A DNA stretch of 64,000 nucleotides from positions 62,001 through 126,000 of the forward strand of contig CBFFRP010000423.1 in the NCBI GenBank assembly GCA_965644295.1, read 5' to 3'. Made by a program: the position numbers and the translations under genes. Positions 6,019 through 47,096 of this stretch are shown here, one piece after another. Each line of letters begins with the position of its first letter. The stretch's first letter is position 1. Origin of the DNA: Paraphysomonas bandaiensis. Its lineage: Eukaryota; Protista; Chrysophyceae. The notes beneath the pieces are model-generated. The model saw only the letters and a list, made by a program, of their open reading frames with translations. It had not been told where the DNA came from and made no database searches.

Positions 6019-6072
6019 TGTAATGTTAGGGATATGAGGTTGCTATGCATGTATATATGAGAATAATGACAG

Positions 6073-6359
6073 TATGTATGTATGTATGTATGTATGTATG
6101 TATGTATGTATGTATGTATGTATGTATGTATGTATGTATGTATGTATGTATGTATGTATGTATGTATGTATGTATGTATGTATGTATGTATGTATGTATG
6201 TATGTATGTATGTATGTATGTATGTATGTATGTATGTATGTATGTATGTATGTATGTATGTATGTATGTATGTATGTATGTATGTATGTATGTATGTATG
6301 TATGTATGTATGTATGTATGTATGTATGTATGTATGTATGTATGTATGTATGTATGTAT
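6073..6359. repeat. (TATG)n microsatellite, left half of an array split by the LTR element
   Basis: Perfect TATG repeat read directly. Confidence 0.99.
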
Positions 6360-10525: not shown

Positions 10526-10589
10526 TTGTTCTAAAACGCGTTTTCATTTCCTAACTCTTTTAGACATCAGTATGACTAAATATCGATAT

Positions 10590-10796: not shown

Positions 10797-11102
10797 GTAT
10801 GTATGTATGTATGTATGTATGTATGTATGTATGTATGTATGTATGTATGTATGTATGTATGTATGTATGTATGTATGTATGTATGTATGTATGTATGTAT
10901 GTATGTATGTATGTATGTGTGTATGTATGTATGTATGTATGTATGTATGTATGTATGTATGTATGTATGTATGTATGTATGTATGTATGTATGTATGTAT
11001 GTATGTATGTATGTATGTATGTATGTATGTATGTATGTATGTATGTATGTATGTATGTATGTATGTATGTATGTATGTATGTATGTATGTATGTATGTAT
11101 GT
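10797..11102. repeat. (TATG)n microsatellite, right half
   Basis: Read directly; one TGTG interruption near 10918. Confidence 0.99.
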
Positions 11103-18032: not shown

Positions 18033-18923
18033 ATGATAGGTAAACGGATAGAAAATTAGTGACTTTTGTGGTGGCTGTGAATGTAGTCGAATAGTAATAA
18101 ACATTTATATTCAAAATGCTGCAACGTAACCAGTGTTGGCAAAGTTTTAACTTCACGAGTGATCACTGCAGTAGTAAATTCCTAACTCAGTACTGATTTC
18201 TGATTATTAAAATGTATACTAATTTCGGTATATCGAAGTGCTATAATTTATAATTCTAACAGTGTTTAACACATTGAATGCCTCCAATATATTTCAGCTT
18301 TTCGTATGGCAACTGAGTTTGCTAATGATTACAAAGCTTTTACCACAATCTGTACTACAACAGCGAATCGCTATAGACATAAGCTTTAAATATTTATTAA
18401 GAAGTATAGTATCATTAAGCGGTTACCTCTTTCATTGCTTTATCAAACCACCACATTCAACATAGTATATTTACCCTACATTTGCAACACAAGTTAGTAG
18501 TTGTGAATGTCTTAATACTAGCTACGAGCCAGGACTAGTATAACATTAGTGCTTAACTCTGATATCCTACTATTTAACGCTACGAACGCTACTTGTGTGT
18601 CACCGCAAGCACCAAGTTACAACCACTTCTGCTCTATCACTCAAAGCAAATGCAATGAGCAACCAGAGTGTTGATATGCCTGACATCGGCTAACTCTAGA
18701 GCTAAGTAGATGTGTATTGAAACAGGACAAGTCTATGCATGTTTTCTTATGATTATACTCTTGCGGCTGTTGTGATAATATATGCTGGTGACTGTTATCT
18801 GTACTATACGCTACTGGCCACAGGGTGTATATATAAGAGAAGAGTCATGGAAGTAACCACAGAGACTAGACACATGCTGTATATCCAAATACATAAGATA
18901 CGTACATAGCTCCCTGTATATGC

Positions 18924-19263
18924 ATGTATGTATGTATGTATGTATGTATGTATGTATGTATGTATGTATGTATGTATGTATGTATGTATGTATGTATGTA
19001 TGTATGTATGTATGTATGTATGTATGTATGTATGTATGTATGTATGTATGTATGTATGTATGTATGTATGTATGTATGTATGTATGTATGTATCTTTATA
19101 CAGTGGTATGTATGTATGTATGTATGTATGTATGTATGTATGTATGTATGTATGTATGTATGTATGTATGTATGTATGTATGTATGTATGTATGTATGTA
19201 TGTATGTATGTATGTATGTATGTATGTATCTTTATACAGTGGTATGTATGTATGTGTATGTAT
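18924..19263. repeat. (TATG)n microsatellite with two identical CTTTATACAGTG interruptions
   Basis: Read directly; interruptions near 19094 and 19230 indicate a block duplication. Confidence 0.97.
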
Positions 19264-22401: not shown

Positions 22402-25400
22402 TTACAGTGTTGGCCAGGGAAGCGCTGCGTACCGTACGGCGTACTGAGACGGATGTGCCCCCATGTTTTGGAGGAATTGGACAACCTCTGTGTGACCATT
22501 GAGGAGCGCGGCATCAGCTGCTGTTGACGACGCATATACTCCCAAGGAGGAAAGAAATTGAACAACCTCGAGGTGGCCATTCTCAGCAGCAACATCGACG
22601 GCTTGGGTAGAGGCACTATAAGCGCCCTTACTCTTATCCATTAACCACTTGAGAGTCACTATATTTCCAGTCATTGCCGCATGATCACATGCATCTGGGT
22701 GAATAGGTATATTGCATTCCAAATGCAACCACTCAAGTAAGGCGATAGGACCAGCTATTGCCGCATTCAATGCCGCTGCAGGGGTCGGCTGAACCCCTGC
22801 TGTATGACATAGCCATTTGGCAACACCCAACTGTCCACCACCGCATGCAGCCTCAATAGCTGACGCATTGAATAGCTCCCGTACATAGTAGTTGCTCGAA
22901 TCATCATCAGTTGGTTTGGCAGACTGTCCAGTTGAACATGTCTTGGAATGTGTCTGAACAACTTCCCAGAGCCACTTTAAGACATCCTCATACCCTACTC
23001 GGGCTGCTGCTTGAACAGCTGTTGAAGAACAGCGCCCCAGCATGTTTTCATACATCCACGGCAATACTGTCAGCCGATGAGGTGTGACCACTACAGTGTC
23101 CATCGTGCAGTCGATAGCACGTCTCCAAACATTGGGCGACCATTTACGATACGGTTCATTTCGAATTTCACCTTGAATATGGCCCATCACATCCAGCGCC
23201 CTGAATACAATTGTCAAGCATCTGGAATTCCAAAATGCAAGGTATTAACAACTATAGCATATAATACATACCCGTAAGGCATGACGTATTTCTCATTATA
23301 AACAGTGGAGCCCATATCAGAGTAATCCAGATCTCCATCGGCAGGAGCAGATCTATCATTGGCTCCCGGTGCATTCACCATTGGCATATTATCTGCTTCC
23401 CGAAGGTTGGAAGTCGTGTCATCCAATTTTCGTTTCGACATAGTTATCATTTCATTGCACTCCCGCTGCTGATAATTCGCTGAGGGCATATCAAGGCTAA
23501 CATCATCATCTTCCAATGACTCATAATCATTTGAAGAGTACTCGAAATCTCCTCCATCGTCGCCATCACTTAGTATTGAATTGCCATCATCAAACTTTAT
23601 ACCACCACAATCCTCGTCCATTTCATCCACACTACCGGTCTCAGCATCAGACAAATCACTCGCAAGCATAATGTACTTGGCCTCAGGTATAATTCGTTTA
23701 GACAAAAGGTAGTTCATTATTTCTATGTCCCCTCTCAACGCAAGCCGATTCAGTCCTTCGGGACTGCAGCCGACCTAAGGGACAGCACTAATTAAAAGCA
23801 CTCAGTTAATAAACAAGCATCTACGTGGTGTAAGATGACAAAAGATTCCCACCTCTAGAACTTCAACAGCATACTGAATAACACTCCAGTGTCCTCCCCC
23901 GCAAGCAGCATCAAACGCCACTTCCATGTACTGGCCTAATTCACCGCGGTTCGACACAAGAAATTCAACAATCTCTCTATGACCATTTGCAGCAGCACCA
24001 ATCAGAGCTGCAGTGGTACATCCTTCTGGTCGGTTGCGATGCAGCCATTGAACAACAGCTAAATCTCCTTTGATAGCAGCCTCTGGTATAAATGTTATGT
24101 TACGCATATACATCGTTATTACTGAATAATGTATTCTTACCATCCATAACCTGTGAAGTGCAAGTAGCAATAGTGTTCTGCTGTAAGAAATCTAAAACGT
24201 CAAGATGACCTGCCAGTGCAGCACGTTCTAACGCAGAACCAATCTCAATAATTCCCAATGACGTCAAGAATTCAATGACTGGTAAATGACCTTTGGCTGC
24301 AGCAGCTGCATAACCCTTTAGCATATATATTCGAGTTTATATATATACATACACATACATCAAAACACATCTATATCTATAAATAAACATATACACACAT
24401 CTATGTACATATATATACACACAACTATGTACATATATATATTCACACATCTATACATATATCTATACACACATCTATGTACATATATATATATACATCT
24501 ATACATATATATACACATCCTATACACATATCTAAATACACACATCTATGTACATATATATACACATCTCTCTACATATATATATTCACACATCTATACA
24601 TATATCTATACACACATCTATGTACATATATATATATACATCTATACATATATATACAGATCTCTATACATACATATACACACATCTATGTACATATATA
24701 TACACACATCTATGTACATATATATACACACATCTATACATATATATACACATCCTATACACATATCTAAATACACACATCTATGCACATATATATACAC
24801 ACATCTATACATATATATACACACATCTATGCATACATCTATGTACATATATATACACACATCTATACATATATATACACACATCTATACACACATCTAT
24901 ACACACATCTATGTACATATATATACACACATCTATACATATATATACACACATCTATACATATATATACACACATCTATACACATATCTAAATACACAC
25001 ATCTATGTACATATATATACACACATCTATACATATATATACACACATCTATGCATACATCTATGTACATATATATATATACATCTATACATATATATAC
25101 AGATCTCTATACATACATATACACACATCTATGTACATATATATACACACATCTATACATATATATACACACATCTATGCATACATCTATGTACATATAT
25201 ATACACACATCTATACATATATATACACACATCTATACACATCTATACATATATATACACACATCTATACATATATATACACACATCTATACATATATAT
25301 ACACACATCTATGTACATATATATACACACATCTATACATATATATACACACATCTATACACACATCTATGTACATATATATACACACATCTATACATAT

Positions 25401-26090
25401 ATATACACACATCTATACATATATATACACACATCTATACACATATCTAAATACACACATCAATGTACATATATATACACACATCTATACATACATCTAT
25501 GTACATATATATACACACATCTATACATATATATACACATCTCTATACACATATCTAAATACACACATCTATGTACATATATATACACATCTCTCTACAT
25601 ACATATACATACATCTATACATACATCTATGTACATATATATACACATCTCTATACACATATCTAAATACACACATCTATGTACATATATATACACATCT
25701 CTCTACATATATATACATACATCTATACATACATCTATGTACATATATATACACATCTCTCTACATATACACACATCTATGTATATATATATACACATCT
25801 CTATACACACATCTAAATACACTCATCAATGTACATATATATACACACATCTATACATACATCTATGTACATATATATACACATCTCTCTACATATACAT
25901 ACATCTATCTACCTTCAATAGCTCTTGTTCCCATAATTCGATTCTCTTTCTTTCTCATCATACGTTTGATCATAATTAAATCCCCACATTCTGCTGCTTG
26001 TATTAATTTTTCTATTGTAATATCTGCTTCAATCGTCTCATCTGATGATGATGATGATGTATTGCGTATAACTCGACATGTATTTATCAT
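22402..26090 (-). CDS. Ankyrin-repeat protein (oomycete-style AAxxGH repeats) with a 1.6-kb first intron
   Basis: Repeats AIEAAAAKGHLPVIEFL, VVQWLHRNRPEGCTTAALIGAAANGHREIVEFL and AVDVAAENGHLEVVQFL; five exons joined by GT-AG introns (24306-25912 and three short ones); acidic insert. Confidence 0.85.
24340..25908. repeat. Degenerate ~22-24-bp minisatellite (ACACATCTAT[GT]ACATATATAT) filling intron 1
   Basis: Read directly; it generates the spurious YIHT ORFs. Confidence 0.95.
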
Positions 26091-29395: not shown

Positions 29396-29894
29396 CTAAA
29401 CTCTGCTGGGATACAACATGACGCGAACTGGAGACCCAATGGTGGTAGGCTGCATGATATATACCGTTAACAACATCTACTAAAACAAAGCAAATATATT
29501 CTTACCGACAGGTTGGTAGAAAACTTGGCACGCACGACACCATTAGAACCATGAGGGCGGGTCACTTTACCCCATACAACACGGAATTTGGAACCCGCCT
29601 TAGCAGCCTGAGCTCTGTAGATGTATGCAACCTTCTTACCAAGGTAGAAATCAACAGCCTCCTTATCATTACATCCTTCAATTTTTAAAAGATTTGTATG
29701 ATGATATGTGTTTCTTCTTCCTCTATATTGAATTATTAATGATAATGTATGTATATATGTATATATATGTATCGTACCTCTTGAAACCAAGTATAGTGCC
29801 TTTGACATGAAGTCTCACAGGCTATAAGAGTAATTTTATATAGATATCATTATCAGTAACATGAACTTACCCTGTTGGAATTAGATGCTGGCAT
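29396..29894 (-). CDS. RPL35A: 60S ribosomal protein L35a (eL33), 4 exons
   Basis: RLHVKGTILGFKR|GRRNTYHHTNLLKIEG..FYLGKKVAYIYRA..RVVWGKVTRPHGSNGVVRAKF..|PTTIGSPVRVMLYPSRV*. Confidence 0.96.
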
Positions 29895-30557: not shown

Positions 30558-30780
30558 ATGAAGCCAGAGGAAACAGGTAAAGAATATGAACTACATTTTG
30601 AATTACTCCAAGAACTTCATGCACTGGATCAATCGGTCACTGACATTTCAAAGATCAGTCGTCTGAAAGAAGGGGTGGTTACTGAGTAATACGATACATT
30701 GAACTGTACATTGTATCTGTTACCTGATGATGTTACATATGAGATGTTATCTAAAAGATAGAACAATTCGATGACACGAT
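30558..30780 (+). pseudogene. Degenerate Ty1/copia gag fragment, inverted relative to the copy at 30950-31180
   Basis: ATGAAGCCAGAGGAAA...ATTTCAAAGATCAGTCGTCTGAAAGAAGG...TTCGATGACACGA aligns by eye to the reverse complement of about 30953-31177; contains stops and indels. Confidence 0.75.
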
Positions 30781-30799
30781 GTATGCAACATGTGTACTC

Positions 30800-31610
30800 T
30801 CTGCTTCCTGGTCTCTGTCCCTTTACCTCTTTTTGCTTTGTTCTTCATTGATCCGTATTATGATTATATCGTATACCTTTCTTCGAACAATGTAATTCAT
30901 CTCCTCCTCCATAATCCTTCACTTCTTGTTAAGGATTCGTCTCCCAGCCTTCGTGTCGTCGAAGTGTTCTATCTTCTTCGATACAATTTCCTTTGTAATA
31001 CCATCAAGCAATAAATACAAGGCACAATTCAATGCATCATATTCATCATTAACAAGACCTTCCTTCAGGCGACTGATTTTTGAAATTTCTGTTACCGTTT
31101 GATTCAGTGCCTGAAGCTCTCGGAGTAGTAGCCCAAAACGTATTACATATTCATTGGCACTTTCCTCTGGCTTCATCTCAAATGACCCGTATTGAGTGAT
31201 TAGATCACCGATCTTGTTCTGTTTTCCTTCTTTACGTGTGTGCACCATTTCGAGCGCATTGAACTTATTGTCCCTTCCTTTCGCTGCTTTGAACTCCTTA
31301 CGCCTTCTGAACTCAGATGGAACTTCTGAAACGCCTTTGGAAGCCGCTTCACCGCCTCCCTGTAGTATGAAGAGGCGATCGCATTTGCCTTCTAGTATTC
31401 TGTTCCAACTTGCTTGAAAGATTTGGTCTCAAGCTTGTAGAGCGGTGGAATCCCGAAGTTCTCCTACTTTGGTGGTCTGTGCAGCACTACCTCACTCTGT
31501 TCCTTTCGCATGAGGAACGTCTCGAAATCTTCTATTTATTGTTCAACATTGTTATCATAGAACCAAGGCACATCAAAACTATCCTCCTTCTCTCCTCCAC
31601 ATCCGCTACC
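30800..31610 (-). pseudogene. Ty1/copia gag relic
   Basis: FEMKPEESANEYVIRFGLLLRELQALNQTVTE..KISRLKEGL..EYDAL (copia gag_2/UBN2-like). The upstream frame SFDVPWFYDNNVEQ*IEDFETFLMRK resembles the copia gag N-terminal motif and runs into the first tandem unit. Confidence 0.7.
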
Positions 31611-34600
31611 ATATTGGTGATGTTTTCAACATTTTTACTTGTTAAGATCGTTAAAGGAATGTCGTTACACTAGATGGATGACTATTTAGTAAAAAGTTGA
31701 AAACAAGCCAACATAGTAGCGGATGTGGAGGAGAATTGTTCAACATTGTTATCAATAGAACCAAGGCACATCAAAACTATCCTCCTTCTCTCCTCCACAT
31801 CCGCTACCATATTGGTGATTTTTTCAACATTTTTACTTGTTAAGATCGTTAAAGGAATGTCGTTACACTAGATGGATGACTATTTAGTAAAAAGTTGAAA
31901 ACAAGCCAACATAGTAGCGGATGTGGAGGAGAATTGTTCAACATTGTTATCATAGAACCAAGGCACATCAAAACTATCCTCCTTCTCTCCTCCACATCCG
32001 CTACCATATTGGTGATGTTTTCAACATTTTTACTTGTTAAGATCGTTAAAGGAATGTCGTTACACTAGATGGATGACTATTTAGTAAAAAGTTGAAAACA
32101 AGCCAACATAGTAGCGGATGTGGAGGAGAATTGTTCAACATTGTTATCATAGAACCAAGGCACATCAAAACTATCCTCCTTCTCTCCTCCACATCCGCTA
32201 CCATATTGGTGATGTTTTCAACATTTTTACTTGTTAAGATCGTTAAAGGAATGTCGTTACACTAGATGGATGACTATTTAGTAAAAAGTTGAAAACAAGC
32301 CAACATAGTAGCGGATGTGGAGGAGAATTGTTCAACATTGTTATCATAGAACCAAGGCACATCAAAACTATCCTCCTTCTCTCCTCCACATCCGCTACCA
32401 TATTGGTGATGTTTTCAACATTTTTACTTGTTAAGATCGTTAAAGGAATGTCGTTACACTAGATGGATGACTATTTAGTAAAAAGTTGAAAACAAGCCAA
32501 CATAGTAGCGGATGTGGAGGAGAATTGTTCAACATTGTTATCATAGAACCAAGGCACATCAAAACTATCCTCCTTCTCTCCTCCACATCCGCTACCATAT
32601 TGGTGATGTTTTCAACATTTTTACTTGTTAAGATCGTTAAAGGAATGTCGTTACACTAGATGGATGACTATTTAGTAAAAAGTTGAAAACAAGCCAACAT
32701 AGTAGCGGATGTGGAGGAGAATTGTTCAACATTGTTATCATAGAACCAAGGCACATCAAAACTATCCTCCTTCTCTCCTCCACATCCGCTACCATATTGG
32801 TGATGTTTTCAACATTTTTACTTGTTAAGATCGTTAAAGGAATGTCGTTACACTAGATGGATGACTATTTAGTAAAAAGTTGAAAACAAGCCAACATAGT
32901 AGCGGATGTGGAGGAGAATTGTTCAACATTGTTATCATAGAACCAAGGCACATCAAAACTATCCTCCTTCTCTCCTCCACATCCGCTACCATATTGGTGA
33001 TGTTTTCAACATTTTTACTTGTTAAGATCGTTAAAGGAATGTCGTTACACTAGATGGATGACTATTTAGTAAAAAGTTGAAAACAAGCCAACATAGTAGC
33101 GGATGTGGAGGAGAATTGTTCAACATTGTTATCATAGAACCAAGGCACATCAAAACTATCCTCCTTCTCTCCTCCACATCCGCTACCATATTGGTGATGT
33201 TTTCAACATTTTTACTTGTTAAGATCGTTAAAGGAATGTCGTTACACTAGATGGATGACTATTTAGTAAAAAGTTGAAAACAAGCCAACATAGTAGCGGA
33301 TGTGGAGGAGAATTGTTCAACATTGTTATCATAGAACCAAGGCACATCAAAACTATCCTCCTTCTCTCCTCCACATCCGCTACCATATTGGTGATGTTTT
33401 CAACATTTTTACTTGTTAAGATCGTTAAAGGAATGTCGTTACACTAGATGGATGACTATTTAGTAAAAAGTTGAAAACAAGCCAACATAGTAGCGGATGT
33501 GGAGGAGAATTGTTCAACATTGTTATCATAGAACCAAGGCACATCAAAACTATCCTCCTTCTCTCCTCCACATCCGCTACCATATTGGTGATGTTTTCAA
33601 CATTTTTACTTGTTAAGATCGTTAAAGGAATGTCGTTACACTAGATGGATGACTATTTAGTAAAAAGTTGAAAACAAGCCAACATAGTAGCGGATGTGGA
33701 GGAGAATTGTTCAACATTGTTATCATAGAACCAAGGCACATCAAAACTATCCTCCTTCTCTCCTCCACATCCGCTACCATATTGGTGATGTTTTCAACAT
33801 TTTTACTTGTTAAGATCGTTAAAGGAATGTCGTTACACTAGATGGATGACTATTTAGTAAAAAGTTGAAAACAAGCCAACATAGTAGCGGATGTGGAGGA
33901 GAATTGTTCAACATTGTTATCATAGAACCAAGGCACATCAAAACTATCCTCCTTCTCTCCTCCACATCCGCTACCATATTGGTGATGTTTTCAACATTTT
34001 TACTTGTTAAGATCGTTAAAGGAATGTCGTTACACTAGATGGATGACTATTTAGTAAAAAGTTGAAAACAAGCCAACATAGTAGCGGATGTGGAGGAGAA
34101 TTGTTCAACATTGTTATCATAGAACCAAGGCACATCAAAACTATCCTCCTTCTCTCCTCCACATCCGCTACCATATTGGTGATGTTTTCAACATTTTTAC
34201 TTGTTAAGATCGTTAAAGGAATGTCGTTACACTAGATGGATGACTATTTAGTAAAAAGTTGAAAACAAGCCAACATAGTAGCGGATGTGGAGGAGAATTG
34301 TTCAACATTGTTATCATAGAACCAAGGCACATCAAAACTATCCTCCTTCTCTCCTCCACATCCGCTACCATATTGGTGATGTTTTCAACATTTTTACTTG
34401 TTAAGATCGTTAAAGGAATGTCGTTACACTAGATGGATGACTATTTAGTAAAAAGTTGAAAACAAGCCAACATAGTAGCGGATGTGGAGGAGAATTGTTC
34501 AACATTGTTATCATAGAACCAAGGCACATCAAAACTATCCTCCTTCTCACATCATTGTTATCATAGAACCAAGGCACATCAAAACTATCCTCCTTCTCTC

Positions 34601-37600
34601 CTCCACATCCGCTACCATATTGGTGATGTTTTCAACATTTTTACTTGTTAAGATCGTTAAAGGAATGTCGTTACACTAGATGGATGACTATTTAGTAAAA
34701 AGTTGAAAACAAGCCAACATAGTAGCGGATGTGGAGGAGAATTGTTCAACATTGTTATCATAGAACCAAGGCACATCAAAACTATCCTCCTTCTCTCCTC
34801 CACATCCGCTACCATATTGGTGATGTTTTCAACATTTTTACTTGTTAAGATCGTTAAAGGAATGTCGTTACACTAGATGGATGACTATTTAGTAAAAAGT
34901 TGAAAACAAGCCAACATAGTAGCGGATGTGGAGGAGAATTGTTCAACATTGTTATCATAGAACCAAGGCACATCAAAACTATCCTCCTTCTCTCCTCCAC
35001 ATCCGCTACCATATTGGTGATGTTTTCAACATTTTTACTTGTTAAGATCGTTAAAGGAATGTCGTTACACTAGATGGATGACTATTTAGTAAAACGTTGA
35101 AAACAAGCCAACATAGTAGCGGATGTGGAGGAGAATTGTTCAACATTGTTATCATAGAACCAAGGCACATCAAAACTATCCTCCTTCTCTCCTCCACATC
35201 CGCTACCATATTGGTGATGTTTTCAACATTTTTACTTGTTAAGATCGTTAAAGGAATGTCGTTACACTAGATGGATGACTATTTAGTAAAAAGTTGAAAA
35301 CAAGCCAACATAGTAGCGGATGTGGAGGAGAATTGTTCAACATTGTTATCATAGAACCAAGGCACATCAAAACTATCCTCCTTCTCTCCTCCACATCCGC
35401 TACCATATTGGTGATGTTTTCAACATTTTTACTTGTTAAGATCGTTAAAGGAATGTCGTTACACTAGATGGATGACTATTTAGTAAAAAGTTGAAAACAA
35501 GCCAACATAGTAGCGGATGTGGAGGAGAATTGTTCAACATTGTTATCATAGAACCAAGGCACATCAAAACTATCCTCCTTCTCTCCTCCACATCCGCTAC
35601 CATATTGGTGATGTTTTCAACATTTTTACTTGTTAAGATCGTTAAAGGAATGTCGTTACACTAGATGGATGACTATTTAGTAAAAAGTTGAAAACAAGCC
35701 AACATAGTAGCGGATGTGGAGGAGAATTGTTCAACATTGTTATCATAGAACCAAGGCACATCAAAACTATCCTCCTTCTCTCCTCCACATCCGCTACCAT
35801 ATTGGTGATGTTTTCAACATTTTTACTTGTTAAGATCGTTAAAGGAATGTCGTTACACTAGATGGATGACTATTTAGTAAAACGTTGAAAACAAGCCAAC
35901 ATAGTAGCGGATGTGGAGGAGAATTGTTCAACATTGTTATCATAGAACCAAGGCACATCAAAACTATCCTCCTTCTCTCCTCCACATCCGCTACCATATT
36001 GGTGATGTTTTCAACATTTTTACTTGTTAAGATCGTTAAAGGAATGTCGTTACACTAGATGGATGACTATTTAGTAAAAAGTTGAAAACAAGCCAACATA
36101 GTAGCGGATGTGGAGGAGAATTGTTCAACATTGTTATCATAGAACCAAGGCACATCAAAACTATCCTCCTTCTCTCCTCCACATCCGCTACCATATTGGT
36201 GATGTTTTCAACATTTTTACTTGTTAAGATCGTTAAAGGAATGTCGTTACACTAGATGGATGACTATTTAGTAAAAAGTTGAAAACAAGCCAACATAGTA
36301 GCGGATGTGGAGGAGAATTGTTCAACATTGTTATCATAGAACCAAGGCACATCAAAACTATCCTCCTTCTCTCCTCCACATCCGCTACCATATTGGTGTT
36401 GTTTTCAACATTTTTACTTGTTAAGATCGTTAAAGGAATGTCGTTACACTAGATGGATGACTATTTAGTAAAAAGTTGAAAACAAGCCAACATAGTAGCG
36501 GATGTGGAGGAGAATTGTTCAACATTGTTATCATAGAACCAAGGCACATCAAAACTATCCTCATTCTCTCCTCCACATCCGCTACCATATTGGTGATGTT
36601 TTCAACATTTTTACTTGTTAAGATCGTTAAAGGAATGTCGTTACACTAGATGGATGACTATTTAGTAAAAAGTTGAAAACAAGCCAACATAGTAGCGGAT
36701 GTGGAGGAGAATTGTTCAACATTGTTATCATAGAACCAAGGCACATCAAAACTATCCTCCTTCTCTCCTCCACATCCGCTACCATATTGGTGATGTTTTC
36801 AACATTTTTACTTGTTAAGATCGTTAAAGGAATGTCGTTACACTAGATGGATGACTATTTAGTAAAAAGTTGAAAACAAGCCAACATAGTAGCGGATGTG
36901 GAGGAGAATTGTTCAACATTGTTATCATAGAACCAAGGCACATCAAAACTATCCTCCTTCTCTCCTCCACATCCGCTACCATATTGGTGATGTTTTCAAC
37001 ATTTTTACTTGTTAAGATCGTTAAAGGAATGTCGTTACACTAGATGGATGACTATTTAGTAAAAAGTTGAAAACAAGCCAACATAGTAGCGGATGTGGAG
37101 GAGAATTGTTCAACATTGTTATCATAGAACCAAGGCACATCAAAACTATCCTCCTTCTCTCCTCCACATCCGCTACCATATTGGTGATGTTTTCAACATT
37201 TTTACTTGTTAAGATCGTTAAAGGAATGTCGTTACACTAGATGGATGACTATTTAGTAAAAAGTTGAAAACAAGCCAACATAGTAGCGGATGTGGAGGAG
37301 AATTGTTCAACATTGTTATCATAGAACCAAGGCACATCAAAACTATCCTCATTCTCTCCTCCACATCCGCTACCATATTGGTGATGTTTTCAACATTTTT
37401 ACTTGTTAAGATCGTTAAAGGAATGTCGTTACACTAGATGGATGACTATTTAGTAAAAAGTTGAAAACAAGCCAACATAGTAGCGGATGTGGAGGAGAAT
37501 TGTTCAACATTGTTATCATAGAACCAAGGCACATCAAAACTATCCTCCTTCTCTCCTCCACATCCGCTACCATATTGGTGATGTTTTCAACATTTTTACT

Positions 37601-40600
37601 TGTTAAGATCGTTAAAGGAATGTCGTTACACTAGATGGATGACTATTTAGTAAAAAGTTGAAAACAAGCCAACATAGTAGCGGATGTGGAGGAGAATTGT
37701 TCAACATTGTTATCATAGAACCAAGGCACATCAAAACTATCCTCCTTCTCTCCTCCACATCCGCTACCATATTGGTGATGTTTTCAACATTTTTACTTGT
37801 TAAGATCGTTAAAGGAATGTCGTTACACTAGATGGATGACTATTTAGTAAAAAGTTGAAAACAAGCCAACATAGTAGCGGATGTGGAGGAGAATTGTTCA
37901 ACATTGTTATCATAGAACCAAGGCACATCAAAACTATCCTCCTTCTCTCCTCCACATCCGCTACCATATTGGTGATGTTTTCAACATTTTTACTTGTTAA
38001 GATCGTTAAAGGAATGTCGTTACACTAGATGGATGACTATTTAGTAAAAAGTTGAAAACAAGCCAACATAGTAGCGGATGTGGAGGAGAATTGTTCAACA
38101 TTGTTATCATAGAACCAAGGCACATCAAAACTATCCTCCTTCTCTCCTCCACATCCGCTACCATATTGGTGATGTTTTCAACATTTTTACTTGTTAAGAT
38201 CGTTAAAGGAATGTCGTTACACTAGATGGATGACTATTTAGTAAAAAGTTGAAAACAAGCCAACATAGTAGCGGATGTGGAGGAGAATTGTTCAACATTG
38301 TTATCATAGAACCAAGGCACATCAAAACTATCCTCCTTCTCTCCTCCACATCCGCTACCATATTGGTGATGTTTTCAACATTTTTACTTGTTAAGATCGT
38401 TAAAGGAATGTCGTTACACTAGATGGATGACTATTTAGTAAAAAGTTGAAAACAAGCCAACATAGTAGCGGATGTGGAGGAGAATTGTTCAACATTGTTA
38501 TCATAGAACCAAGGCACATCAAAACTATCCTCCTTCTCTCCTCCACATCCGCTACCATATTGGTGATGTTTTCAACATTTTTACTTGTTAAGATCGTTAA
38601 AGGAATGTCGTTACACTAGATGGATGACTATTTAGTAAAAAGTTGAAAACAAGCCAACATAGTAGCGGATGTGGAGGAGAATTGTTCAACATTGTTATCA
38701 TAGAACCAAGGCACATCAAAACTATCCTCCTTCTCTCCTCCACATCCGCTACCATATTGGTGATGTTTTCAACATTTTTACTTGTTAAGATCGTTAAAGG
38801 AATGTCGTTACACTAGATGGATGACTATTTAGTAAAAAGTTGAAAACAAGCCAACATAGTAGCGGATGTGGAGGAGAATTGTTCAACATTGTTATCATAG
38901 AACCAAGGCACATCAAAACTATCCTCCTTCTCTCCTCCACATCCGCTACCATATTGGTGATGTTTTCAACATTTTTACTTGTTAAGATCGTTAAAGGAAT
39001 GTCGTTACACTAGATGGATGACTATTTAGTAAAAAGTTGAAAACAAGCCAACATAGTAGCGGATGTGGAGGAGAATTGTTCAACATTGTTATCATAGAAC
39101 CAAGGCACATCAAAACTATCCTCATTCTCTCCTCCACATCCGCTACCATATTGGTGATGTTTTCAACATTTTTACTTGTTAAGATCGTTAAAGGAATGTC
39201 GTTACACTAGATGGATGACTATTTAGTAAAAAGTTGAAAACAAGCCAACATAGTAGCGGATGTGGAGGAGAATTGTTCAACATTGTTATCATAGAACCAA
39301 GGCACATCAAAACTATCCTCCTTCTCTCCTCCACATCCGCTACCATATTGGTGATGTTTTCAACATTTTTACTTGTTAAGATCGTTAAAGGAATGTCGTT
39401 ACACTAGATGGATGACTATTTAGTAAAAAGTTGAAAACAAGCCAACATAGTAGCGGATGTGGAGGAGAATTGTTCAACATTGTTATCATAGATCCAAGGC
39501 ACATCAAAACTATCCTCCTTCTCTCCTCCACATCCGCTACCATATTGGTGTTGTTTTCAACATTTTTACTTGTTAAGATCGTTAAAGGAATGTCGTTACA
39601 CTAGATGGATGACTATTTATTAGTAAAAAGTTGAAAACAAGCCAACATAGTAGCGGATGTGGAGGAGAATTGTTCAACATTGTTATCATAGAACCAAGGC
39701 ACATCAAAACTATCCTCCTTCTCTCCTCCACATCCGCTACCATATTGGTGATGTTTTCAACATTTTTACTTGTTAAGATCGTTAAAGGAATGTCGTTACA
39801 CTAGATGGATGACTATTTAGTAAAAAGTTGAAAACAAGCCAACATAGTAGCGGATGTGGAGGAGAATTGTTCAACATTGTTATCATAGAACCAAGGCACA
39901 TCAAAACTATCCTCCTTCTCTCCTCCACATCCGCTACCATATTGGTGTTGTTTTCAACATTTTTACTTGTTAAGATCGTTAAAGGAATGTCGTTACACTA
40001 GATGGATGACTATTTAGTAAAAAGTTGAAAACAAGCCAACATGGTAGCGGATGTGGAGGAGAATTGTTCAACATTGTTATCATAGAACCAAGGCACATCA
40101 AAACTATCCTCATTCTCTCCTCCACATCCGCTACCATATTGGTGATGTTTTCAACATTTTTACTTGTTAAGATCGTTAAAGGAATGTCGTTACACTAGAT
40201 GGATGACTATTTAGTAAAAAGTTGAAAACAAGCCAACATAGTAGCGGATGTGGAGGAGAATTGTTCAACATTGTTATCATAGAACCAAGGCACATCAAAA
40301 CTATCCTCCTTCTCTCCTCCACATCCGCTACCATATTGGTGATGTTTTCAACATTTTTACTTGTTAAGATCGTTAAAGGAATGTCGTTACACTAGATGGA
40401 TGACTATTTAGTAAAAAGTTGAAAACAAGCCAACATAGTAGCGGATGTGGAGGAGAATTGTTCAACATTGTTATCATAGAACCAAGGCACATCAAAACTA
40501 TCCTCCTTCTCTCCTCCACATCCGCTACCATATTGGTGATGTTTTCAACATTTTTACTTGTTAAGATCGTTAAAGGAATGTCGTTACACTAGATGGATGA

Positions 40601-42118
40601 CTATTTAGTAAAAAGTTGAAAACAAGCCAACATAGTAGCGGATGTGGAGGAGAATTGTTCAACATTGTTATCATAGAACCAAGGCACATCAAAACTATCC
40701 TCCTTCTCTCCTCCACATCCGCTACCATATTGGTGATGTTTTCAACATTTTTACTTGTTAAGATCGTTAAAGGAATGTCGTTACACTAGATGGATGACTA
40801 TTTAGTAAAAAGTTGAAAACAAGCCAACATAGTAGCGGATGTGGAGGAGAATTGTTCAACATTGTTATCATAGAACCAAGGCACATCAAAACTATCCTCC
40901 TTCTCTCCTCCACATCCGCTACCATATTGGTGATGTTTTCAACATTTTTACTTGTTAAGATCGTTAAAGGAATGTCGTTACACTAGATGGATGACTATTT
41001 AGTAAAAAGTTGAAAACAAGCCAACATAGTAGCGGATGTGGAGGAGAATTGTTCAACATTGTTATCATAGAACCAAGGCACATCAAAACTATCCTCCTTC
41101 TCTCCTCCACATCCGCTACCATATTGGTGTTGTTTTCAACATTTTTACTTGTTAAGATCGTTAAAGGAATGTCGTTACACTAGATGGATGACTATTTATT
41201 AGTAAAAAGTTGAAAACAAGCCAACATAGTAGCGGATGTGGAGGAGAATTGTTCAACATTGTTATCATAGAACCAAGATGAGGATTGACAACATTGTTAT
41301 CATAGAACCAAGGCACATCAAAACTATCCTCCTTCTCTCCTCCACATCCGCTACCATATTGGTGTTGTTTTCAACATTTTTACTTGTTAAGATCGTTAAA
41401 GGAATGTCGTTACACTAGATGGATGACTATTTAGTAAAAAGTTGAAAACAAGCCAACATAGTAGCGGATGTGGAGGAGAATTGTTCAACATTGTTATCAT
41501 AGAACCAAGGCACATTGGAGGAGAATTGTTCAACATTGTTATCATAGAACCAAGGCACATCAAAACTATCCTCCTTCTCTCCTCCACATCCGCTACCATA
41601 TTGGTGATGTTTTCAACATTTTTACTTGTTAAGATCGTTAAAGGAATGTCGTTACACTAGATGGATGACTATTTATTAGTAAAAAGTTGAAAACAAGCCA
41701 ACATAGTAGCGGATGTGGAGGAGAATTGTTCAACATTGTTATCATAGAACCAAGGCACATCAAAACTATCCTCCTTCTCTCCTCCACATCCGCTACCATA
41801 TTGGTGATGTTTTCAACATTTTTACTTGTTAAGATCGTTAAAGGAATGTCGTTACACTAGATGGATGACTATTTAGTAAAAAGTTGAAAACAAGCCAACA
41901 TAGTAGCGGATGTGGAGGAGAATTGTTCAACATTGTTATCATAGAACCAAGGCACATCAAAACTATCCTCATTCTCTCCTCCACATCCGCTACCATATTG
42001 GTGATGTTTTCAACATTTTTACTTGTTAAGATCGTTAAAGGAATGTCGTTACACTAGATGGATGACTATTTAGTAAAAAGTTGAAAACAAGCCAGCATAG
42101 TAGCGGATGTGGAGGAGA
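31538..42118. repeat. Tandem array of about 53 near-identical 197-bp units, each containing a ~47-bp inverted repeat
   Basis: Period 197 (GATCGTTAAA at 32041 and 34011 = 10 units). Arms TCTCCTCCACATCCGCTACCATATTGGTGATGTTTTCAACATTTTTACT and AGTAAAAAGTTGAAAACAAGCCAACATAGTAGCGGATGTGGAGGAGA. Confidence 0.98.
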
Positions 42119-42539
42119 GCTGCATCCATACCTTTCCCTGAATGTAAGCATTATTGCCAGTGCAATTGTTGAGCAGGCAGTGGCTAAAATTCAAGCGTTG
42201 ACAGGAAATGAGAGAAGAGCAGTTAGACATCTGCAACTGGATTCATCCATTGATTTTGGTGATTTGACAGAAATAACGAGGACGACAGTGAAGGAAGTGA
42301 TTTTGCACAGTGTGTTCTGGACAGCGCCGAGGTCACCAAGAGAGCTCGACTTGGTACCTATGAGTCCAACTACCGCTGCTTGCTTCATATTGAAGCACAA
42401 TCTAATGTTGTTGAGAGGCTTCTTTAGTCGTGCAAAGTTTATAATCACACCTGAACGTAGAAACACGAATCTATATCGTTTAGAATCGTTGCTATTCCTA
42501 CGGACGAATTACATGTTGTGGGATGCTTACCCTCCATGA
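42119..42539 (+). pseudogene. hAT-like transposase C-terminal (dimerisation domain) relic
   Basis: YLSLNVSIIASAIVEQAVAKIQ..LT..E..AV and FFSRAKFIITPERRNTNLYRLESLLFLRTNYMLWD match the hAT ERxFS..R..L..LLFL..N..W pattern; internally deleted. Confidence 0.65.
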
Positions 42540-43142
42540 AGCGCTGCAAGAAGATCCTGATGTGCCAGTAGAGAGCGAGAAGTAGTTAAAATTCGTAGTT
42601 TGCTATTTAACTAAAAATTAGTAGTTAAGGGAGCACAGCACTATCTATTATATGAGTGGTGCTATCTACTTTAAGTTAGTAGGCATTAATGGCGGTTATA
42701 ATTGCCGGGAATTGGACTACCAGTAATGGTTACCAGGCCCTGGATTCTTATATTATTATTGCTTATTGCATAGGCTATTATGAATTGTCATGTAAACTGC
42801 AGAACACATCAACAACATAATTTTATACTTATTTCATGTATACCTGAATTAATTCAGTTAATTCTTACGCACCCCTATGGGAAACATAGGTATTCCGTAT
42901 TCCAACAAGTACTAGTTAGTTCACTTGTTTTGCTGCAATAGATCTGACTCTTACACGACTATTGCTAATAATCAGACATTCACTACTAGAGAGATGACTA
43001 TTATTGAATATAGACAGTCCTGCGTTGTCGTGTAAAACATAGAAACAAAATAAAAACTATATCTTATCATTATTACTACATAAAAGCCGAACGCGTCCTA
43101 ATGATGGTAAATGAATATGTAAGTAAATCGTCCTCAGATCAC

Positions 43143-46100
43143 CTAATCTGTCGTACCAATTTTACTCCCCTGACCAACCGTCGCGCTACTGCACAGCAAC
43201 TTTTCAACTACACGTTTCAGTATTGTTGCAATATCTTTGCGGCGATATTCAGTCTGCTTGGATACAGAGCACCACACCTCACCGTGATGGGGTTCAGCGG
43301 CAACACACCGCTGGAGTACATCCTCCGCTAAATTGGAGCTGCCATCTCCTGTTGATTCGGCAGCATGTCGTAGCTCAAATGCATAGTAAAAGGCCCATGC
43401 GTCACCATAATCGGGATCTAGTGTAACGGCTCTGGTGAACCACTTTCTAGCCTTCGCAATCTTGTGGTCTTTATCGAAAAGTCTGGCAACTGAGACGATG
43501 ACATGCGGGTTGTTATCACATCGTTTCAGAGCATCCACAGACTTGGACTTCTGCTGCGACTTTTGGCACGTCAGTACCTCCTCAGCCCAGAGCACACCTG
43601 AGTTCGGGCACTCCTGCAATGCGCGTGCCATGAGGTTCTCAGCAAGCTTTGCGTTGTTGTGTCTGCGTTCCAGTCGTATGGCCTCCAGCCAAAGGTGCTC
43701 ATTCTTTGGTAACTTGAGCTTGGCAAGTTCTAGCACTGAACGTGCCTTGCTTACTCCTTGCATCTTCTCACACAGTCGAGTGGTCAAAATAGCAAGAACG
43801 TACGATTCAGGACACTGCTTCATACCCATTTGGAAATAGCTTTTCGCCCTGGGAAGGTCACAGAGAACCTCGTCACACGCTTGACCGGCCATCATGTAGT
43901 ACTTTGCAAACGTCGGATATCTAGTCAACGCTTCGTCCAGTATTTTGAGCTCTGCCTCAATATCCCCTACTTCTCTCTCCAATAATGCCGCTTTCATCCA
44001 TACGCGTTCTGTAGACGCATTCTCACGTGCTTTCGCGAGAAGACTACGTGCACGAGCTATCTCATTATTTTCCCACTCTAACTTCACTGCAGCAAGCCAT
44101 ATCTGTTCCGAATTAGGATTGGCATCGAATGCTTCTATGAGAATAGCTCGAGCTGAAGGTACATCTCCGGCCATCCATTTTTCCTTGGCCGCCATCAACC
44201 ATAGATGTTCTGCCTGCGGGCAGTGTTTTACTGCTTCTTTGAGCACCTCCTCCAATCGCTCTGGGGTTCCATGCTCTTTCTCAAGCAGCGCCGCATCCAT
44301 CCATACTCCTTTTTTGTTCGGGAATTCCGCCATGCACTGTGCATAAATTGCTCGAGCAGTCTCCACAGCCACATTCCCCGGTGGGCGACTGAGACAGGCC
44401 TCGGCATCATCCAGCCATCGGTGCCTCAGGTCCTCCTCCTCCACTCCCAGATGTATCGTATGGCGCACAATAGCAGCACACGTCAATGGTGACCCTGCAA
44501 ACTCCGCCGCCTCAGCTTCCTTTAGCCACTGGTCACGATCAATGACCACTTGATATTGTGACAGTGATGATAACGCTTTCTCTATGATGCGATTCACTAC
44601 TTCTCCAGATGCACCATGGGCCTCTTCGAGCTTAGCAGCCGTAATCCATATAGCCGGTTCAGTTGGGATCGCCTCGCGCGCGGTATTCAGTACCTTCCTA
44701 GCATTCTCATACGTTTCAAGTCGTGCCAAAGCTAACCACATATCGACCGAATGAGGAACACACTCCACAGCTCTGGCAAGCATGATACGTGCATCCTCTA
44801 CTCCCTCCAACTCGATCGCGGTCTTCCATAGCTTCACTGAGTTCGGAACAAATTCGAGTGCCCGCCGTAATACAACCTTCTTTTGAGCATCAGACGTCTC
44901 TAAATCCGCTGCGCGCAACCAAAGTTTAACAGAGCTCGGTATATGACGCACAGCTGTAGCAAGGATAGTACGTGCATTTTCCGGAGTGTGCAAACGAGCA
45001 GCTTCCAACCACACATCCTCAGAGTCGGGGCTGGCCTCACATCCCTGTCGAATAATTTTACGTGCCTGTACAACTTTGCCTGCAAACTCCTCTACTCTGG
45101 CTGCAGCTATCCATCCAGGGCCATGCTTGGGATTAGTGGACGTCACAGATGACAAGAGCGTGCGTGCTTTCTGGATGTCTCCTACCTCAGCATCACTGGT
45201 TATACGAAGACTGTTGAGATCTGTCAAATAGCCCTTCGGGTCAACAACCGTTTGTCCTAAAACGAGAAAATCACTACATATTTCAGAACGCATTGTAAAC
45301 TTACCACTAACAGAGTCTGACATTTTGTCCAGCTTCAAAGACAGCACTGTACCTCTTGCCTCAGCCATACCCATGCCAGATACAGTAGAGGTTGCTCCCG
45401 ACAAGGGATCGTCACCAACCACTGTTTGAGTCATGCCAGCATTACCAACCTGGCTCGCGGCACCTTGCAAGATATAGTCGGGCAGAGGTGTGAATACCTC
45501 GTTACGCTTGCGTTGCTTTAGCTTCAGACTATGGTCACCCACATCAGGGATCATATCCCACTGCTCTGACGTAACAGTTGCCAAGTCGCGTTTCAAGTCT
45601 GCGAATTGATCGGCAATTTTGGGCCGCTCTCCACGGTTTTTCTTTAAGTCATCAAGCATTTGTAGTTCTCTGCGCCTTTTGCGTCTGCTGTCCATTCTCT
45701 CATCGACGGCCTCGTAAATTCTATCCGCCTCCTGATCATCCTCCTCGTACGGCACGCCACGGCTGAATAGGGTCTCCCCATAACCCGAAAACTCGTCATA
45801 ATTACTTTCACTATAATCCCCTCTATCCTGTTCTTGTTGCATCTGACGACCACTGAGCTCTCCCTGATCACGAGCCAGTTCCCCCATTCCTCTTCCTCTA
45901 CCCGCCACATACCCCACAGGTGCTGCACCAAACTGTGGTTCCTCTACCACCGGTCGTGCTGGACCAATATCAGATCGTGTAGTAAACCCTATCCAAGAGA
46001 GAGAGTGAGATACGATCCCATCATATAACAATATACATAACTATATATTACAAATCTATAAAATTATTAATAAAAAACATTAAAAATATCACTAAAAATA

Positions 46101-46273: not shown

Positions 46274-46569
46274 ATTCTGTATTGTTAATAAAATCTATAT
46301 ATACAATGAGTGATGCACCAATGTGATATATATGGTATGTAGAGTGTATATATATAGTAATGTAGAGTGATATGAGGGAGCGACTGTGTATATATATACA
46401 TGTGTATATATATGGAGAGATGATATGATGGTCTGCTGGAGACTAGAAAACCATGGTTTTCAAGAGGTAGATGTAGTTTTTATAAAGAAACAAGGTTTTA
46501 TTGAGAATGTTCTCCACACTTCCAAACCTTTTATACAGCAATACCAGTACCACGTACATACAGTACATG

Positions 46570-46866
46570 CATACATACATACATACATACATACATACAT
46601 ACATACATACATACATACATACATACATACATACATACATACATACATACATACATACATACATACATACATACATACATACATACATACATACATACAT
46701 AATACATACATACATACATACATACATACATACATACATACATACATACATACATACATACATACATACATACATACATACATACATACATACATACATA
46801 CATACATACATACATACATACATACATACATACATACATACATACATACATACATACATACATACA

Positions 46867-46900
<34 letters not shown>

Positions 46901-47018
46901 CATACATACATACATACATACATACATACATACATACATACATACATACATACATACATACATACATACATACATACATACATACATACATACATACATA
47001 CATACATACATACATACA
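46570..47018. repeat. (CATA)n microsatellite between divergent PRP6 and UEV genes
   Basis: Read directly. Confidence 0.99.
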
Positions 47019-47096
47019 TGTCTATATGTTCATTATTCTCTCAGTGGTTTGAGATATTTAACAGAGGTTCAAACTAATATTTCCTACCATCCTACC

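What the first reader, a model, noticed from the sequence alone, without database searches (positions are those of the whole stretch)
31538..42118. 10.6-kb array of about 53 hairpin-forming units: candidate TE-derived small-RNA or silencing locus
Seen: each 197-bp unit has ~47-bp inverted arms (first unit 31591-31639 and 31688-31734) with a perfect 19-bp outer duplex (TCTCCTCCACATCCGCTAC/GTAGCGGATGTGGAGGAGA), a ~48-nt loop and a ~50-nt spacer. The array is therefore a polycistron of pre-miRNA-sized stem-loops on either strand, or a chain of cruciforms. Units are nearly identical, implying recent amplification or homogenisation, and the array sits among copia and hAT relics between two housekeeping genes. 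Inference: an amplified hairpin cassette producing small RNAs against the leader of a copia family. Alternatives are a nascent nucleosome-sized satellite or centromere seed, or a rolling-circle amplification product.
Basis: partly seen in the sequence, partly recalled or inferred. Interest (0 to 1): 0.85.

Follow-up and report, generated by a model that had tools for sequence, protein, structure and literature searches.

The report
Hairpin repeat array from dead copia
A real 10.6-kb block of 53 near-identical 197-bp repeats, each able to fold into a hairpin, was built by copying over and over a repair-scarred fragment of a dead copia jumping gene; it is most likely a young, neutral satellite, and nothing yet shows that it makes small RNAs.

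Summary
There are 53 units at 31538-42118; 46 of the 52 spacings are exactly 197 bp and 36 units are identical. Each unit folds into a stem of about 44 bp (RNA z -7.8 and -9.7).

Origin: 151 nt of each unit is the antisense 5' end of a Ty1/copia element (last ~77 nt of the LTR, a primer-binding-site-like TGGTAGCG, first ~25 gag codons). This runs in register into a gag relic on the left flank. The other 46 nt is an inverted copy of the LTR-end/PBS piece. It ends at a microhomology junction with a truncated dispersed repeat, which looks like a fold-back repair scar. The segment was then amplified in place.

The unit junction and the inverted arm occur nowhere else in the 62.5-Mb assembly. The unit closes into a cycle in a marine metagenome, and the right junction is seen in another strain.

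Small RNAs are untested. Argonaute, Dicer-like and RdRP genes are present. However, the unit lacks the LTR promoter, probable RNA runs show at most a faint contig at the array edge, and no 21-mer of the arms matches any copia copy perfectly. It is not a snoRNA array, a MITE or a known RNA family.

Earlier scan notes report other recent tandem arrays and folded TE relics elsewhere in this genome, but none is this array.

The parts
31538..42118 (.). Tandem array of 53 units with a 197-bp consensus; no open frame longer than 71 codons
31933..31985 (-). Example unit (unit 3), spacer: antisense of copia gag codons just downstream of the PBS (sense positions +22 to +74)
31986..32034 (-). Example unit, arm 1: antisense of the copia LTR end (27 nt) plus the PBS-like TGGTAGCG and the following 13 nt; colinear with the spacer and loop
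32035..32082 (-). Example unit, loop: antisense of LTR (U5) positions about -28 to -77
32083..32129 (+). Example unit, arm 2: 46-nt inverted (copia-sense) copy of arm 1, about 87% alike; it shares arm 1's lineage-specific bases and is found only in this array
30785..31658 (-). Copia gag relic (aa 7-314 of the 1587-aa polyprotein of the related intact element, about 65% identity) that continues in register into unit 1
30558..30787 (+). Inverted gag fragment (aa 169-245) abutting the relic. It pairs with 30951-31176 at 78%, but is equally close to gag of copies elsewhere, so it is either a second fold-back or a separate insertion
42116..42753 (+). Truncated copy of a dispersed repeat (at least 40 copies, 85-91% alike). 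Other copies continue leftwards, so 42116-42119 (AGAG) is a breakpoint with microhomology, not a TE terminus
34297..34543 (.). Variant unit of 247 bp (50-bp internal duplication). Other odd units: 39469-39668 (200), 41048-41282 (235), 41283-41524 (242), 41525-41724 (200)
43143..46031 (-). Context: PRP1/PRP6 splicing-factor gene. It is transcribed toward the array, and RNA-like contigs stop at about 43085-43105
29467..29808 (-). Context: ribosomal protein L35Ae exon, downstream of the array on the minus strand

Best explanation
The array is a young tandem repeat found at one locus only, and it grew out of a DNA-repair scar in a dead Ty1/copia element.

Step 1 (shown by anatomy): a copia copy on the minus strand was truncated inside its 5' LTR, about 77 nt before the LTR end. 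Gag codons 1-314, the PBS and the U5 tail remain.

Step 2 (inferred): the broken end folded back on itself, and about 46-49 nt were copied in inverted orientation across the LTR end and PBS. The new end was then joined by 4-nt microhomology to a broken copy of another repeat. This made one hairpin-forming segment.

Step 3 (shown as outcome, mechanism inferred): the 197-bp segment from gag position +74 to the end of the inverted arm was duplicated head to tail. It was then expanded in place to 53 copies by unequal exchange or replication slippage, perhaps helped by the hairpin. Ongoing turnover keeps the units nearly identical.

The array most likely has no selected function. If read-through transcripts cross it, they would fold into one hairpin per unit and could enter RNAi as a by-product.
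For: - **Homology to copia.** Unit positions 1-150 are colinear with dispersed copia copies at 78-86% identity.
- **The related intact element.** L022:3989-9500 on the minus strand is 5.5 kb with identical 323-bp LTRs. Its 1587-aa ORF carries RVT_2, a retroviral SH3-like domain, gag_pre-integrase and copia-type gag.
- **Continuity with the flank.** The left flank continues the same gag frame.
- **Origin of arm 2.** Arm 2 carries arm 1's lineage-specific bases, which the other copia families lack. It differs from arm 1 by about 12%, while units differ by under 0.5%. The inversion therefore either predates the amplification or was copied with errors.
- **The right junction is a breakpoint.** Other copies of the right-hand repeat extend further left, and the shared AGAG sits at the join.
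- **Single locus.** All 52 unit-junction matches and all 53 arm-2 matches in the genome lie in this array.
- **In-place growth.** Both array ends are in phase with their flanks.
- **Segmental turnover.** Marked units recur 4 units apart: units 18 and 22, and units 26 and 30.
- **Real tandem arrangement.** A metagenome gives a 227-nt contig, which is 197 + 30, the closed cycle expected at k = 31. That same run gave no contig on the single-copy flanks. The unit's words are complete in 17 marine runs from 7 studies, although all 17 are flagged as possible sources. Another strain (X20) carries the arm-loop-arm segment and the junction with the right-hand repeat, with 6 substitutions and a 10-nt indel.
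- **Precedent.** Short templated inverted insertions made by fold-back at breaks are documented in yeast (PMC11724301). TE-to-satellite expansion is documented in Drosophila (PMC5932611).
- **Genome habit.** Unchecked scan notes report many other recent tandem amplifications of unrelated content in this genome.
Against: Neutrality is a default here, not a result. No small-RNA, total-RNA, methylation or chromatin data could be examined. In this genome many arrays of similar size and copy number are small-RNA (snoRNA) genes according to earlier notes, which raises the prior that a 53-copy hairpin array is kept for an RNA product. The fold-back inserts documented in yeast are mostly 5-34 bp, shorter than this 46-nt arm with a 48-nt loop. 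The arm divergence could also mean that arm 2 came from a second, closely related copia copy. The copy number in the assembly was not verified with spanning reads.
Confidence: 0.6

Rival explanations
1. The array is a hairpin-RNA (endo-siRNA) cluster. It would be transcribed as one long precursor, for example by read-through from PRP6 on the minus strand. Each unit would fold into a hairpin, and Dicer would cut the stems into siRNAs directed at the PBS and gag start of related copia elements. The closest parallel is the tandem hp-CG4068 cluster of Drosophila.
For: There is one stable hairpin per unit, and the minus-strand RNA pairs better, with 27 contiguous pairs. The genome has two Argonaute/Piwi genes, a Dicer-like frame with two RNase III domains, and two RdRP genes. 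The outer arm lies in the most conserved 33-nt block of the copia clade: 54 non-array copies are within 3 mismatches, about 44 of them from a family with identical LTRs. A contig in a probable RNA run crosses the last unit and the right junction. RNA-seq signal is known to be depleted over hpRNA duplexes (PMC10317233), so weak coverage is not decisive. Tandem hpRNAs with labile copy number are known: 20 copies in D. melanogaster and 9 in D. simulans (PMC10317233).
Against: No small-RNA data exist. No contig was laid on the array body in three probable RNA runs, and the edge contig has depth 8 against 479 for PRP6. The unit lacks the LTR promoter region. No 21-mer target is perfect, and the inner half of the stem has at least 4 mismatches to every sampled copia. 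The PRP6 contigs end about 1 kb before the array. The two wobble-compatible arm differences on the minus strand are expected by chance one time in four.
Confidence: 0.22
2. The array is an assembly artefact: a single hairpin segment, or a few copies, wrongly expanded by the assembler.
For: 36 identical units are hard to place without spanning reads, and depth could not be measured because only contigs were available.
Against: The head-to-tail junction exists in independent data as a closed 227-nt cycle. In that run the multi-copy unit assembled while the single-copy flanks did not. Scattered marker substitutions and five odd-length units give the array internal landmarks. It lies in the interior of its contig.
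Confidence: 0.04
3. The array consists of a mobile foldback or MITE-like element in tandem, or it is a rolling-circle or extrachromosomal-circle product that was re-inserted.
For: The arm-loop-arm segment of about 144 bp has MITE-like dimensions. Perfectly uniform units are what rolling-circle copying would give.
Against: The fold-back junction, arm 2 and the unit junction occur nowhere else in the 62.5-Mb genome, and a scan of metagenome contigs found none. Both array ends are in phase with colinear flanks, and the hairpin ends at a breakpoint rather than a target-site duplication. A circle intermediate followed by homologous re-insertion cannot be excluded.
Confidence: 0.06
4. The array is a set of structured small-RNA genes (snoRNA-like), as in the other arrays of this genome, or a centromere or chromatin-organising satellite.
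For: Earlier notes describe 22-58-copy snoRNA arrays with units of 166-300 bp in this genome. 197 bp is near a nucleosome repeat length.
Against: Neither strand has a D box (CTGA) or a canonical C box. Rfam at E up to 10 gives only generic long-hairpin miRNA models at 38 bits against gathering scores of 140 or more, and no snoRNA. The array's GC content (0.37) equals that of its surroundings. It is a single array between two expressed-looking genes.
Confidence: 0.04

Closest known systems
TE-derived satellite and tandem arrays (e.g. the hobo and Bari1 arrays of Drosophila, PMC5932611; satellites from LTR-retrotransposon parts in plants, from my own knowledge)
   Same: A fragment of a transposable element repeated head to tail, homogenised, with labile copy number and no coding capacity.
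   Different: The unit here is not a whole TE or a TE-internal repeat. It is a chimeric repair product: colinear copia 5' end plus an inverted copy. It sits at one euchromatic locus with only 53 copies, in a stramenopile protist.
Drosophila tandem hairpin-RNA cluster hp-CG4068 (PMC10317233)
   Same: Many head-to-tail copies of one hairpin unit that could be read as a common transcript; copy number changes fast; hpRNAs often arise from inverted duplication of their target.
   Different: Transcription, Dicer dependence, siRNAs and a target are shown for hp-CG4068. None of these is shown here, and no perfectly matching target exists.
Fold-back (templated inverted) insertions at double-strand breaks (PMC11724301; PMC7467729)
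   Same: An inverted copy of sequence next to a break, separated by a short loop, with the far end captured by end joining at microhomology.
   Different: The documented yeast events are mostly 5-34 bp, whereas this one is 46 nt with a 48-nt loop. Here the event is ancient, inferred from anatomy only, and was later amplified 53-fold.
Yeast Ty1 (Ty1/copia; from my own knowledge)
   Same: The related intact element starts its gag frame inside U5, so the PBS-like TGGTAGCG is translated as in Ty1; the motif equals the first 8 nt of the Ty1 PBS.
   Different: The priming tRNA was not found. No tRNA gene has a matching acceptor stem beyond those 8 nt.

Membership tests
TE-derived tandem repeat (satellite in the broad sense) | Head-to-tail units of constant length | tested here: met
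   53 units, 46 of 52 spacings exactly 197 bp
TE-derived tandem repeat (satellite in the broad sense) | Unit homologous to a transposable element | tested here: met
   150 nt colinear with Ty1/copia LTR end, PBS and gag start; the flank continues gag
TE-derived tandem repeat (satellite in the broad sense) | High copy number at several loci, or long heterochromatic blocks (satellite in the strict sense) | tested here: not met
   All unit junctions lie in this one 10.6-kb array
Hairpin-RNA / endo-siRNA locus | Inverted repeat giving a long RNA duplex | tested here: met
   About 44 bp per unit, z -7.8 to -9.7; one hairpin per unit in a 3-unit fold
Hairpin-RNA / endo-siRNA locus | Transcribed primary hairpin transcript | tested here: inconclusive
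   One low-depth contig at the array edge in 1 of 3 probable RNA runs and none on the array body; contigs cannot show strand or level
Hairpin-RNA / endo-siRNA locus | Dicer-dependent 20-25-nt small RNAs from the arms | not testable with these tools
Hairpin-RNA / endo-siRNA locus | A target with extensive complementarity | tested here: inconclusive
   Best 21-mers have 1 mismatch (two old copies) or 2 mismatches (about 44 young copies), in the outer 26 nt only; none is perfect
Hairpin-RNA / endo-siRNA locus | RNAi machinery in the genome | tested here: met
   Piwi domain at 2 loci, a double RNase III frame of 1695 aa, RdRP at 2 loci, all over Pfam cut-offs
miRNA precursor families (Rfam) | Score at or above the family gathering threshold | tested here: not met
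   Best hit 38.4 bits against a gathering score of 139.7; the hits are generic long-hairpin models
Box C/D snoRNA gene array (common in this genome according to scan notes) | C box RUGAUGA and D box CUGA near the ends of a short RNA | tested here: not met
   No CTGA and no RTGATGA on either strand of the unit or across its junction; no snoRNA model in Rfam
MITE / foldback transposon | Dispersed copies with terminal inverted repeats and target-site duplications | tested here: not met
   Arm 2 and the fold-back junction are unique to this locus; the hairpin ends at a breakpoint inside another repeat
Ty1/copia LTR retrotransposon (source of the unit) | Gag-protease-integrase-RT order with RVT_2, LTRs, and a PBS next to the 5' LTR | tested here: met
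   Met for the related intact element: identical 323-bp LTRs, 1587-aa ORF with copia-type gag, gag_pre-integrase, SH3-like and RVT_2 domains, TGGTAGCG 3 nt after the LTR's likely CA end (boundary inferred), purine tract before the 3' LTR. The relic at the array keeps only gag aa 7-314, the PBS and about 77 nt of LTR

The most novel reading that the evidence does not exclude
The array is a working 53-copy hairpin-RNA cluster of a stramenopile protist. It would be born from a fold-back repair scar in a copia 5' end and amplified for dosage like this genome's snoRNA arrays. Its siRNAs would hit the one block (PBS and gag start) that all copia relatives must conserve. That would be a tandem hpRNA transposon-control locus outside animals and plants, caught close to its origin.
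Probability: 0.15. Interest if true: 0.75.

Novelty: new member of a known kind. Interest (0 to 1): 0.4.

Why it matters
The locus shows every step of how a satellite can be born, with the breakpoints still readable: transposon relic, fold-back repair scar, first head-to-tail duplication, then in-place expansion. Because each unit is a hairpin aimed at the most conserved part of a still-active copia clade, it is also a clean test case. It can show whether a new inverted-repeat array is drawn into RNA silencing in a protist that has the RNAi genes but no studied small-RNA biology. If it makes no small RNAs, it is an ordinary young satellite of local interest.

Tried and rejected
- **Self-priming copia.** The related intact element has no 8-nt or longer reverse complement of its PBS region in its LTR.
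- **Priming tRNA.** A pattern for an acceptor stem matching the PBS beyond 8 nt gave five hits, none shaped like a tRNA.
- **Hidden snoRNA.** There are no C or D boxes and no Rfam snoRNA match.
- **Coding array.** No open frame exceeds 71 codons.
- **Metagenome contig scan for the fold-back junction.** Zero hits.
- **Exact look-up of two unit-encoded ORFs in public assemblies.** Neither is on record.
- **Synteny with a relative.** The nearest PRP6 outside this genome is 80% identical. Its 28.8-kb contig shares only PRP6 with the window, so the state before the array could not be seen.
- **The left inverted gag piece as a second fold-back.** Not upheld. It is as close to gag copies elsewhere (76-78%) as to its neighbour.
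- **Unit boundary at LTR position -77 as the transcript start.** The TATA-like motif of the related LTR lies about 215 nt from the LTR end, so this boundary is not obviously the RNA 5' end.
Full report
**1. The observation**

Tandem Repeats Finder reports a 197-bp period from 31538 to 41277 (49.2 copies, 95% matches). A second regular stretch runs from 41516 to 42118, with irregular units between the two.

Of the 52 spacings, 46 are exactly 197. Thirty-six units are identical. The others carry one or two substitutions, or short internal duplications that give units of 198, 200, 235, 242 and 247 bp.

One unit folds as RNA at -68.7 kcal/mol on the + strand (z -7.84) and -77.0 on the - strand (z -9.73). 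As DNA it folds at -40.4 (z -7.6). No shuffle does as well. The stem has a perfect 19-bp base and about 44 pairs. The loop is about 48 nt and the spacer is 53 nt. Three consecutive units fold into three separate hairpins.

**2. What the unit is made of**

A search of the whole 62.5-Mb genome with one unit finds dispersed copies that match unit positions 1-77, 1-113 or 1-147 at 76-86% (confirmed locally). These copies belong to long elements that are over 99% identical to each other.

One of them, L022:3989-9500 on the minus strand, is a complete 5.5-kb element:
- It has identical 323-bp LTRs.
- It has a single 1587-aa frame with copia-type gag, gag_pre-integrase, a retroviral SH3-like domain and RVT_2. 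It is therefore a Ty1/copia element.
- Its LTR probably ends in CA. If so, TGGTAGCG follows 3 nt later, in the canonical place for a primer binding site, and a purine tract precedes the 3' LTR.
- Its gag frame opens with an ATG inside U5, so the PBS-like motif is translated.

Read on the copia sense strand, each array unit holds about 77 nt of LTR end, the PBS-like motif and about 25 gag codons. That is 151 nt colinear with the element. A further 46 nt are the same LTR-end/PBS piece (sense positions -27 to +21) in the opposite orientation.

Arm 2 shares the bases that distinguish arm 1 from every other copia family sampled, so it was copied from the same lineage. The two arms differ by five substitutions and two small indels, about 12%.

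**3. The flanks**

On the left, the copia frame continues without a break from unit 1 through gag aa 7-314 (31658 down to 30785, about 65% identity). The array is therefore anchored in a relic, and the unit phase is the phase of that relic. No protease, integrase or RT remains.

An inverted gag piece (aa 169-245) abuts the relic at 30787 and pairs with 30951-31176 at 78%. It is just as similar to gag copies on other contigs. I therefore leave open whether it is a second fold-back or a separate insertion.

On the right, the last unit ends exactly at the end of arm 2. From 42116 onward the sequence belongs to another dispersed repeat, with at least 40 copies at 85-91% identity. In other copies that repeat continues further left. 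The join is therefore a breakpoint, and AGAG (42116-42119) is shared by both partners.

The whole block lies in the 13-kb gap between an L35Ae ribosomal protein exon (29467-29808, minus) and a PRP1/PRP6 gene (43143-46031, minus). A sulfatase gene and a ubiquitin-conjugating enzyme gene lie further out.

**4. How it most likely arose**

The anatomy reads as a series of events.
- A copia copy was broken inside its 5' LTR.
- The broken end folded back and primed synthesis on itself. AGTA/TACT could have served as microhomology at the turn, which is an inference.
- After about 46-49 nt, the new end was joined by microhomology to a broken copy of the other repeat.

Fold-back priming at breaks, with capture of the far end by end joining, is documented in yeast, mostly for inserts of 5-34 bp (PMC11724301; also PMC7467729).

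Later, the segment from gag position +74 to the end of arm 2 was duplicated head to tail, with at most one shared base at the new junction. It was then expanded in place. Four observations support in-place growth and continuing turnover:
- Both array ends are in phase with their flanks.
- Marked units recur four units apart: units 18 and 22, and units 26 and 30.
- Units differ by under 0.5% while the arms differ by about 12%.
- Another strain differs from the reference by 6 substitutions in 352 nt at the array edge and has one extra, internally deleted unit remnant, seen as a 10-nt insertion.

TE fragments turning into tandem arrays is a known route to satellites (PMC5932611).

**5. Is it real DNA, and is it unique?**

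All 52 genome-wide matches to the unit-to-unit junction, and all 53 matches to arm 2, lie in this array. It is therefore a single-locus array, not a dispersed element.

The unit's sampled 31-mers are complete in 17 marine or seawater metagenome runs from 7 studies. The tool flags all 17 as possible sources of the assembly, so I count this only as likely independent support.

In the one metagenome that I laid, the only contig is 227 nt. That is exactly 197 + 30, the closed cycle expected from a tandem repeat at k = 31. The single-copy flanks gave no contig in that run, which fits a multi-copy unit in a rare organism.

A contig of run X20 (a coded organism, about 99% identical at PRP6) crosses arm 1, the loop, arm 2 and the junction with the right-hand repeat. 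This is independent evidence for the hairpin and the breakpoint. The copy number itself was not verified.

**6. Does it make RNA or small RNAs?**

Runs X18-X20 are probably RNA. One contig is 2920 nt and ends about 40 nt past the PRP6 stop; by its length it should reach roughly the PRP6 start, beyond the stretch I laid. All three runs leave the intergenic stretch 42722-42910 uncovered.

In these runs no contig was laid on the array body. One contig at the right edge (41990-42341) has depth 8.4, against 479 for PRP6. These runs also hold 32-53% of the unit's words. Those words could come from the array or from an expressed relative of its parent element, and I could not tell which.

Contigs show neither strand nor level. 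RNA-seq is known to be depleted over hpRNA duplexes (PMC10317233). The result is therefore inconclusive but not encouraging.

Points in favour of the silencing idea:
- The genome has two Piwi-domain genes, a Dicer-like frame with two RNase III domains and two RdRP genes.
- The outer arm falls in a 33-nt block that is almost invariant across the copia clade. There are 54 non-array copies within 3 mismatches, about 44 of them from the young family.

Points against it:
- The unit lacks the LTR's TATA region.
- No 21-mer of either arm matches a sampled copia perfectly. The best has 1-2 mismatches in the outer 26 nt, and the inner stem has 4 or more.

**7. Other readings tested**

- **snoRNA or other known RNA family.** Rfam with permissive settings returns only generic long-hairpin miRNA models far below threshold, and no snoRNA. 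Neither strand has CTGA or a canonical C box. This array is therefore unlike the snoRNA arrays that earlier scan notes describe in this genome.
- **General amplification habit.** Those notes, and others on recent tandem amplification of whole genes, exons and transposon ends, suggest that this genome amplifies sequence in tandem whatever its content. They are unchecked notes. I use them only as a prior in favour of a by-product.
- **Folded TE relics.** Notes on TE relics folded into inverted repeats elsewhere fit the fold-back reading, but I did not test them.

**8. Verdict**

The structure and origin are well supported. The function is open, and a neutral young satellite is the most likely reading (about 0.6). 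A hairpin-RNA source is the main rival (about 0.2).

The closest known kinds are TE-derived tandem arrays for what it is, and the Drosophila tandem hpRNA cluster for what it could work like. It meets the structural features of the hpRNA cluster, but none of the functional features has been shown.

Noticed in passing
L022:3989-9500 (G000 contig 433), minus strand: An intact 5.5-kb Ty1/copia element with 100% identical 323-bp LTRs. About 44 copies in the genome share its PBS block exactly and the sampled copies are over 99% alike, so the family is very recently active. Its gag frame starts inside U5, so the PBS-like motif is translated, as in yeast Ty1.
   Followed up: partly
window 42116-42753 and L034-L037: An unclassified dispersed repeat with at least 40 copies at 85-91% identity. 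About 1.6 kb is shared among copies, and it contains internal repeats of about 44 bp. Its pieces have very high depth in the probable RNA runs.
   Followed up: partly
window 30558-30787 and 30951-31176: A 222-nt inverted repeat (78%) made of copia gag sequence, with a 171-nt loop, right next to the array. It is either a second fold-back or two relics of different copies joined tail to tail.
   Followed up: partly
window 42113: In run X20 the junction between the array and the right-hand repeat carries 10 extra bases (GGAGAATTGT). This reads as the remnant of one more unit with an internal deletion, so the array edge is polymorphic between strains.
   Followed up: no
window 24339-25912: A 1.5-kb low-GC (0.28) block of degenerate AT/AC-rich short repeats with strong negative GC skew, upstream of the sulfatase gene.
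   Followed up: no
window 6072-6359, 10797-11102, 18919-19263, 46555-47019: Four long, almost pure (GTAT)n or (TACA)n tracts of 290-465 bp. Two of them bracket an LTR element noted earlier by the scan. There is also a 102-bp x 4 repeat at 10129-10537.
   Followed up: no
G000 contigs 119, 212, 377, 355, 96 (L038-L045): RNAi gene set: two Piwi-domain loci, one 1695-aa frame with two RNase III domains, and two RdRP loci.
   Followed up: partly
window 43085-43105: Contigs of three probable RNA runs all end 40-60 nt past the PRP6 stop codon, which marks the likely 3' end of its mRNA.
   Followed up: no
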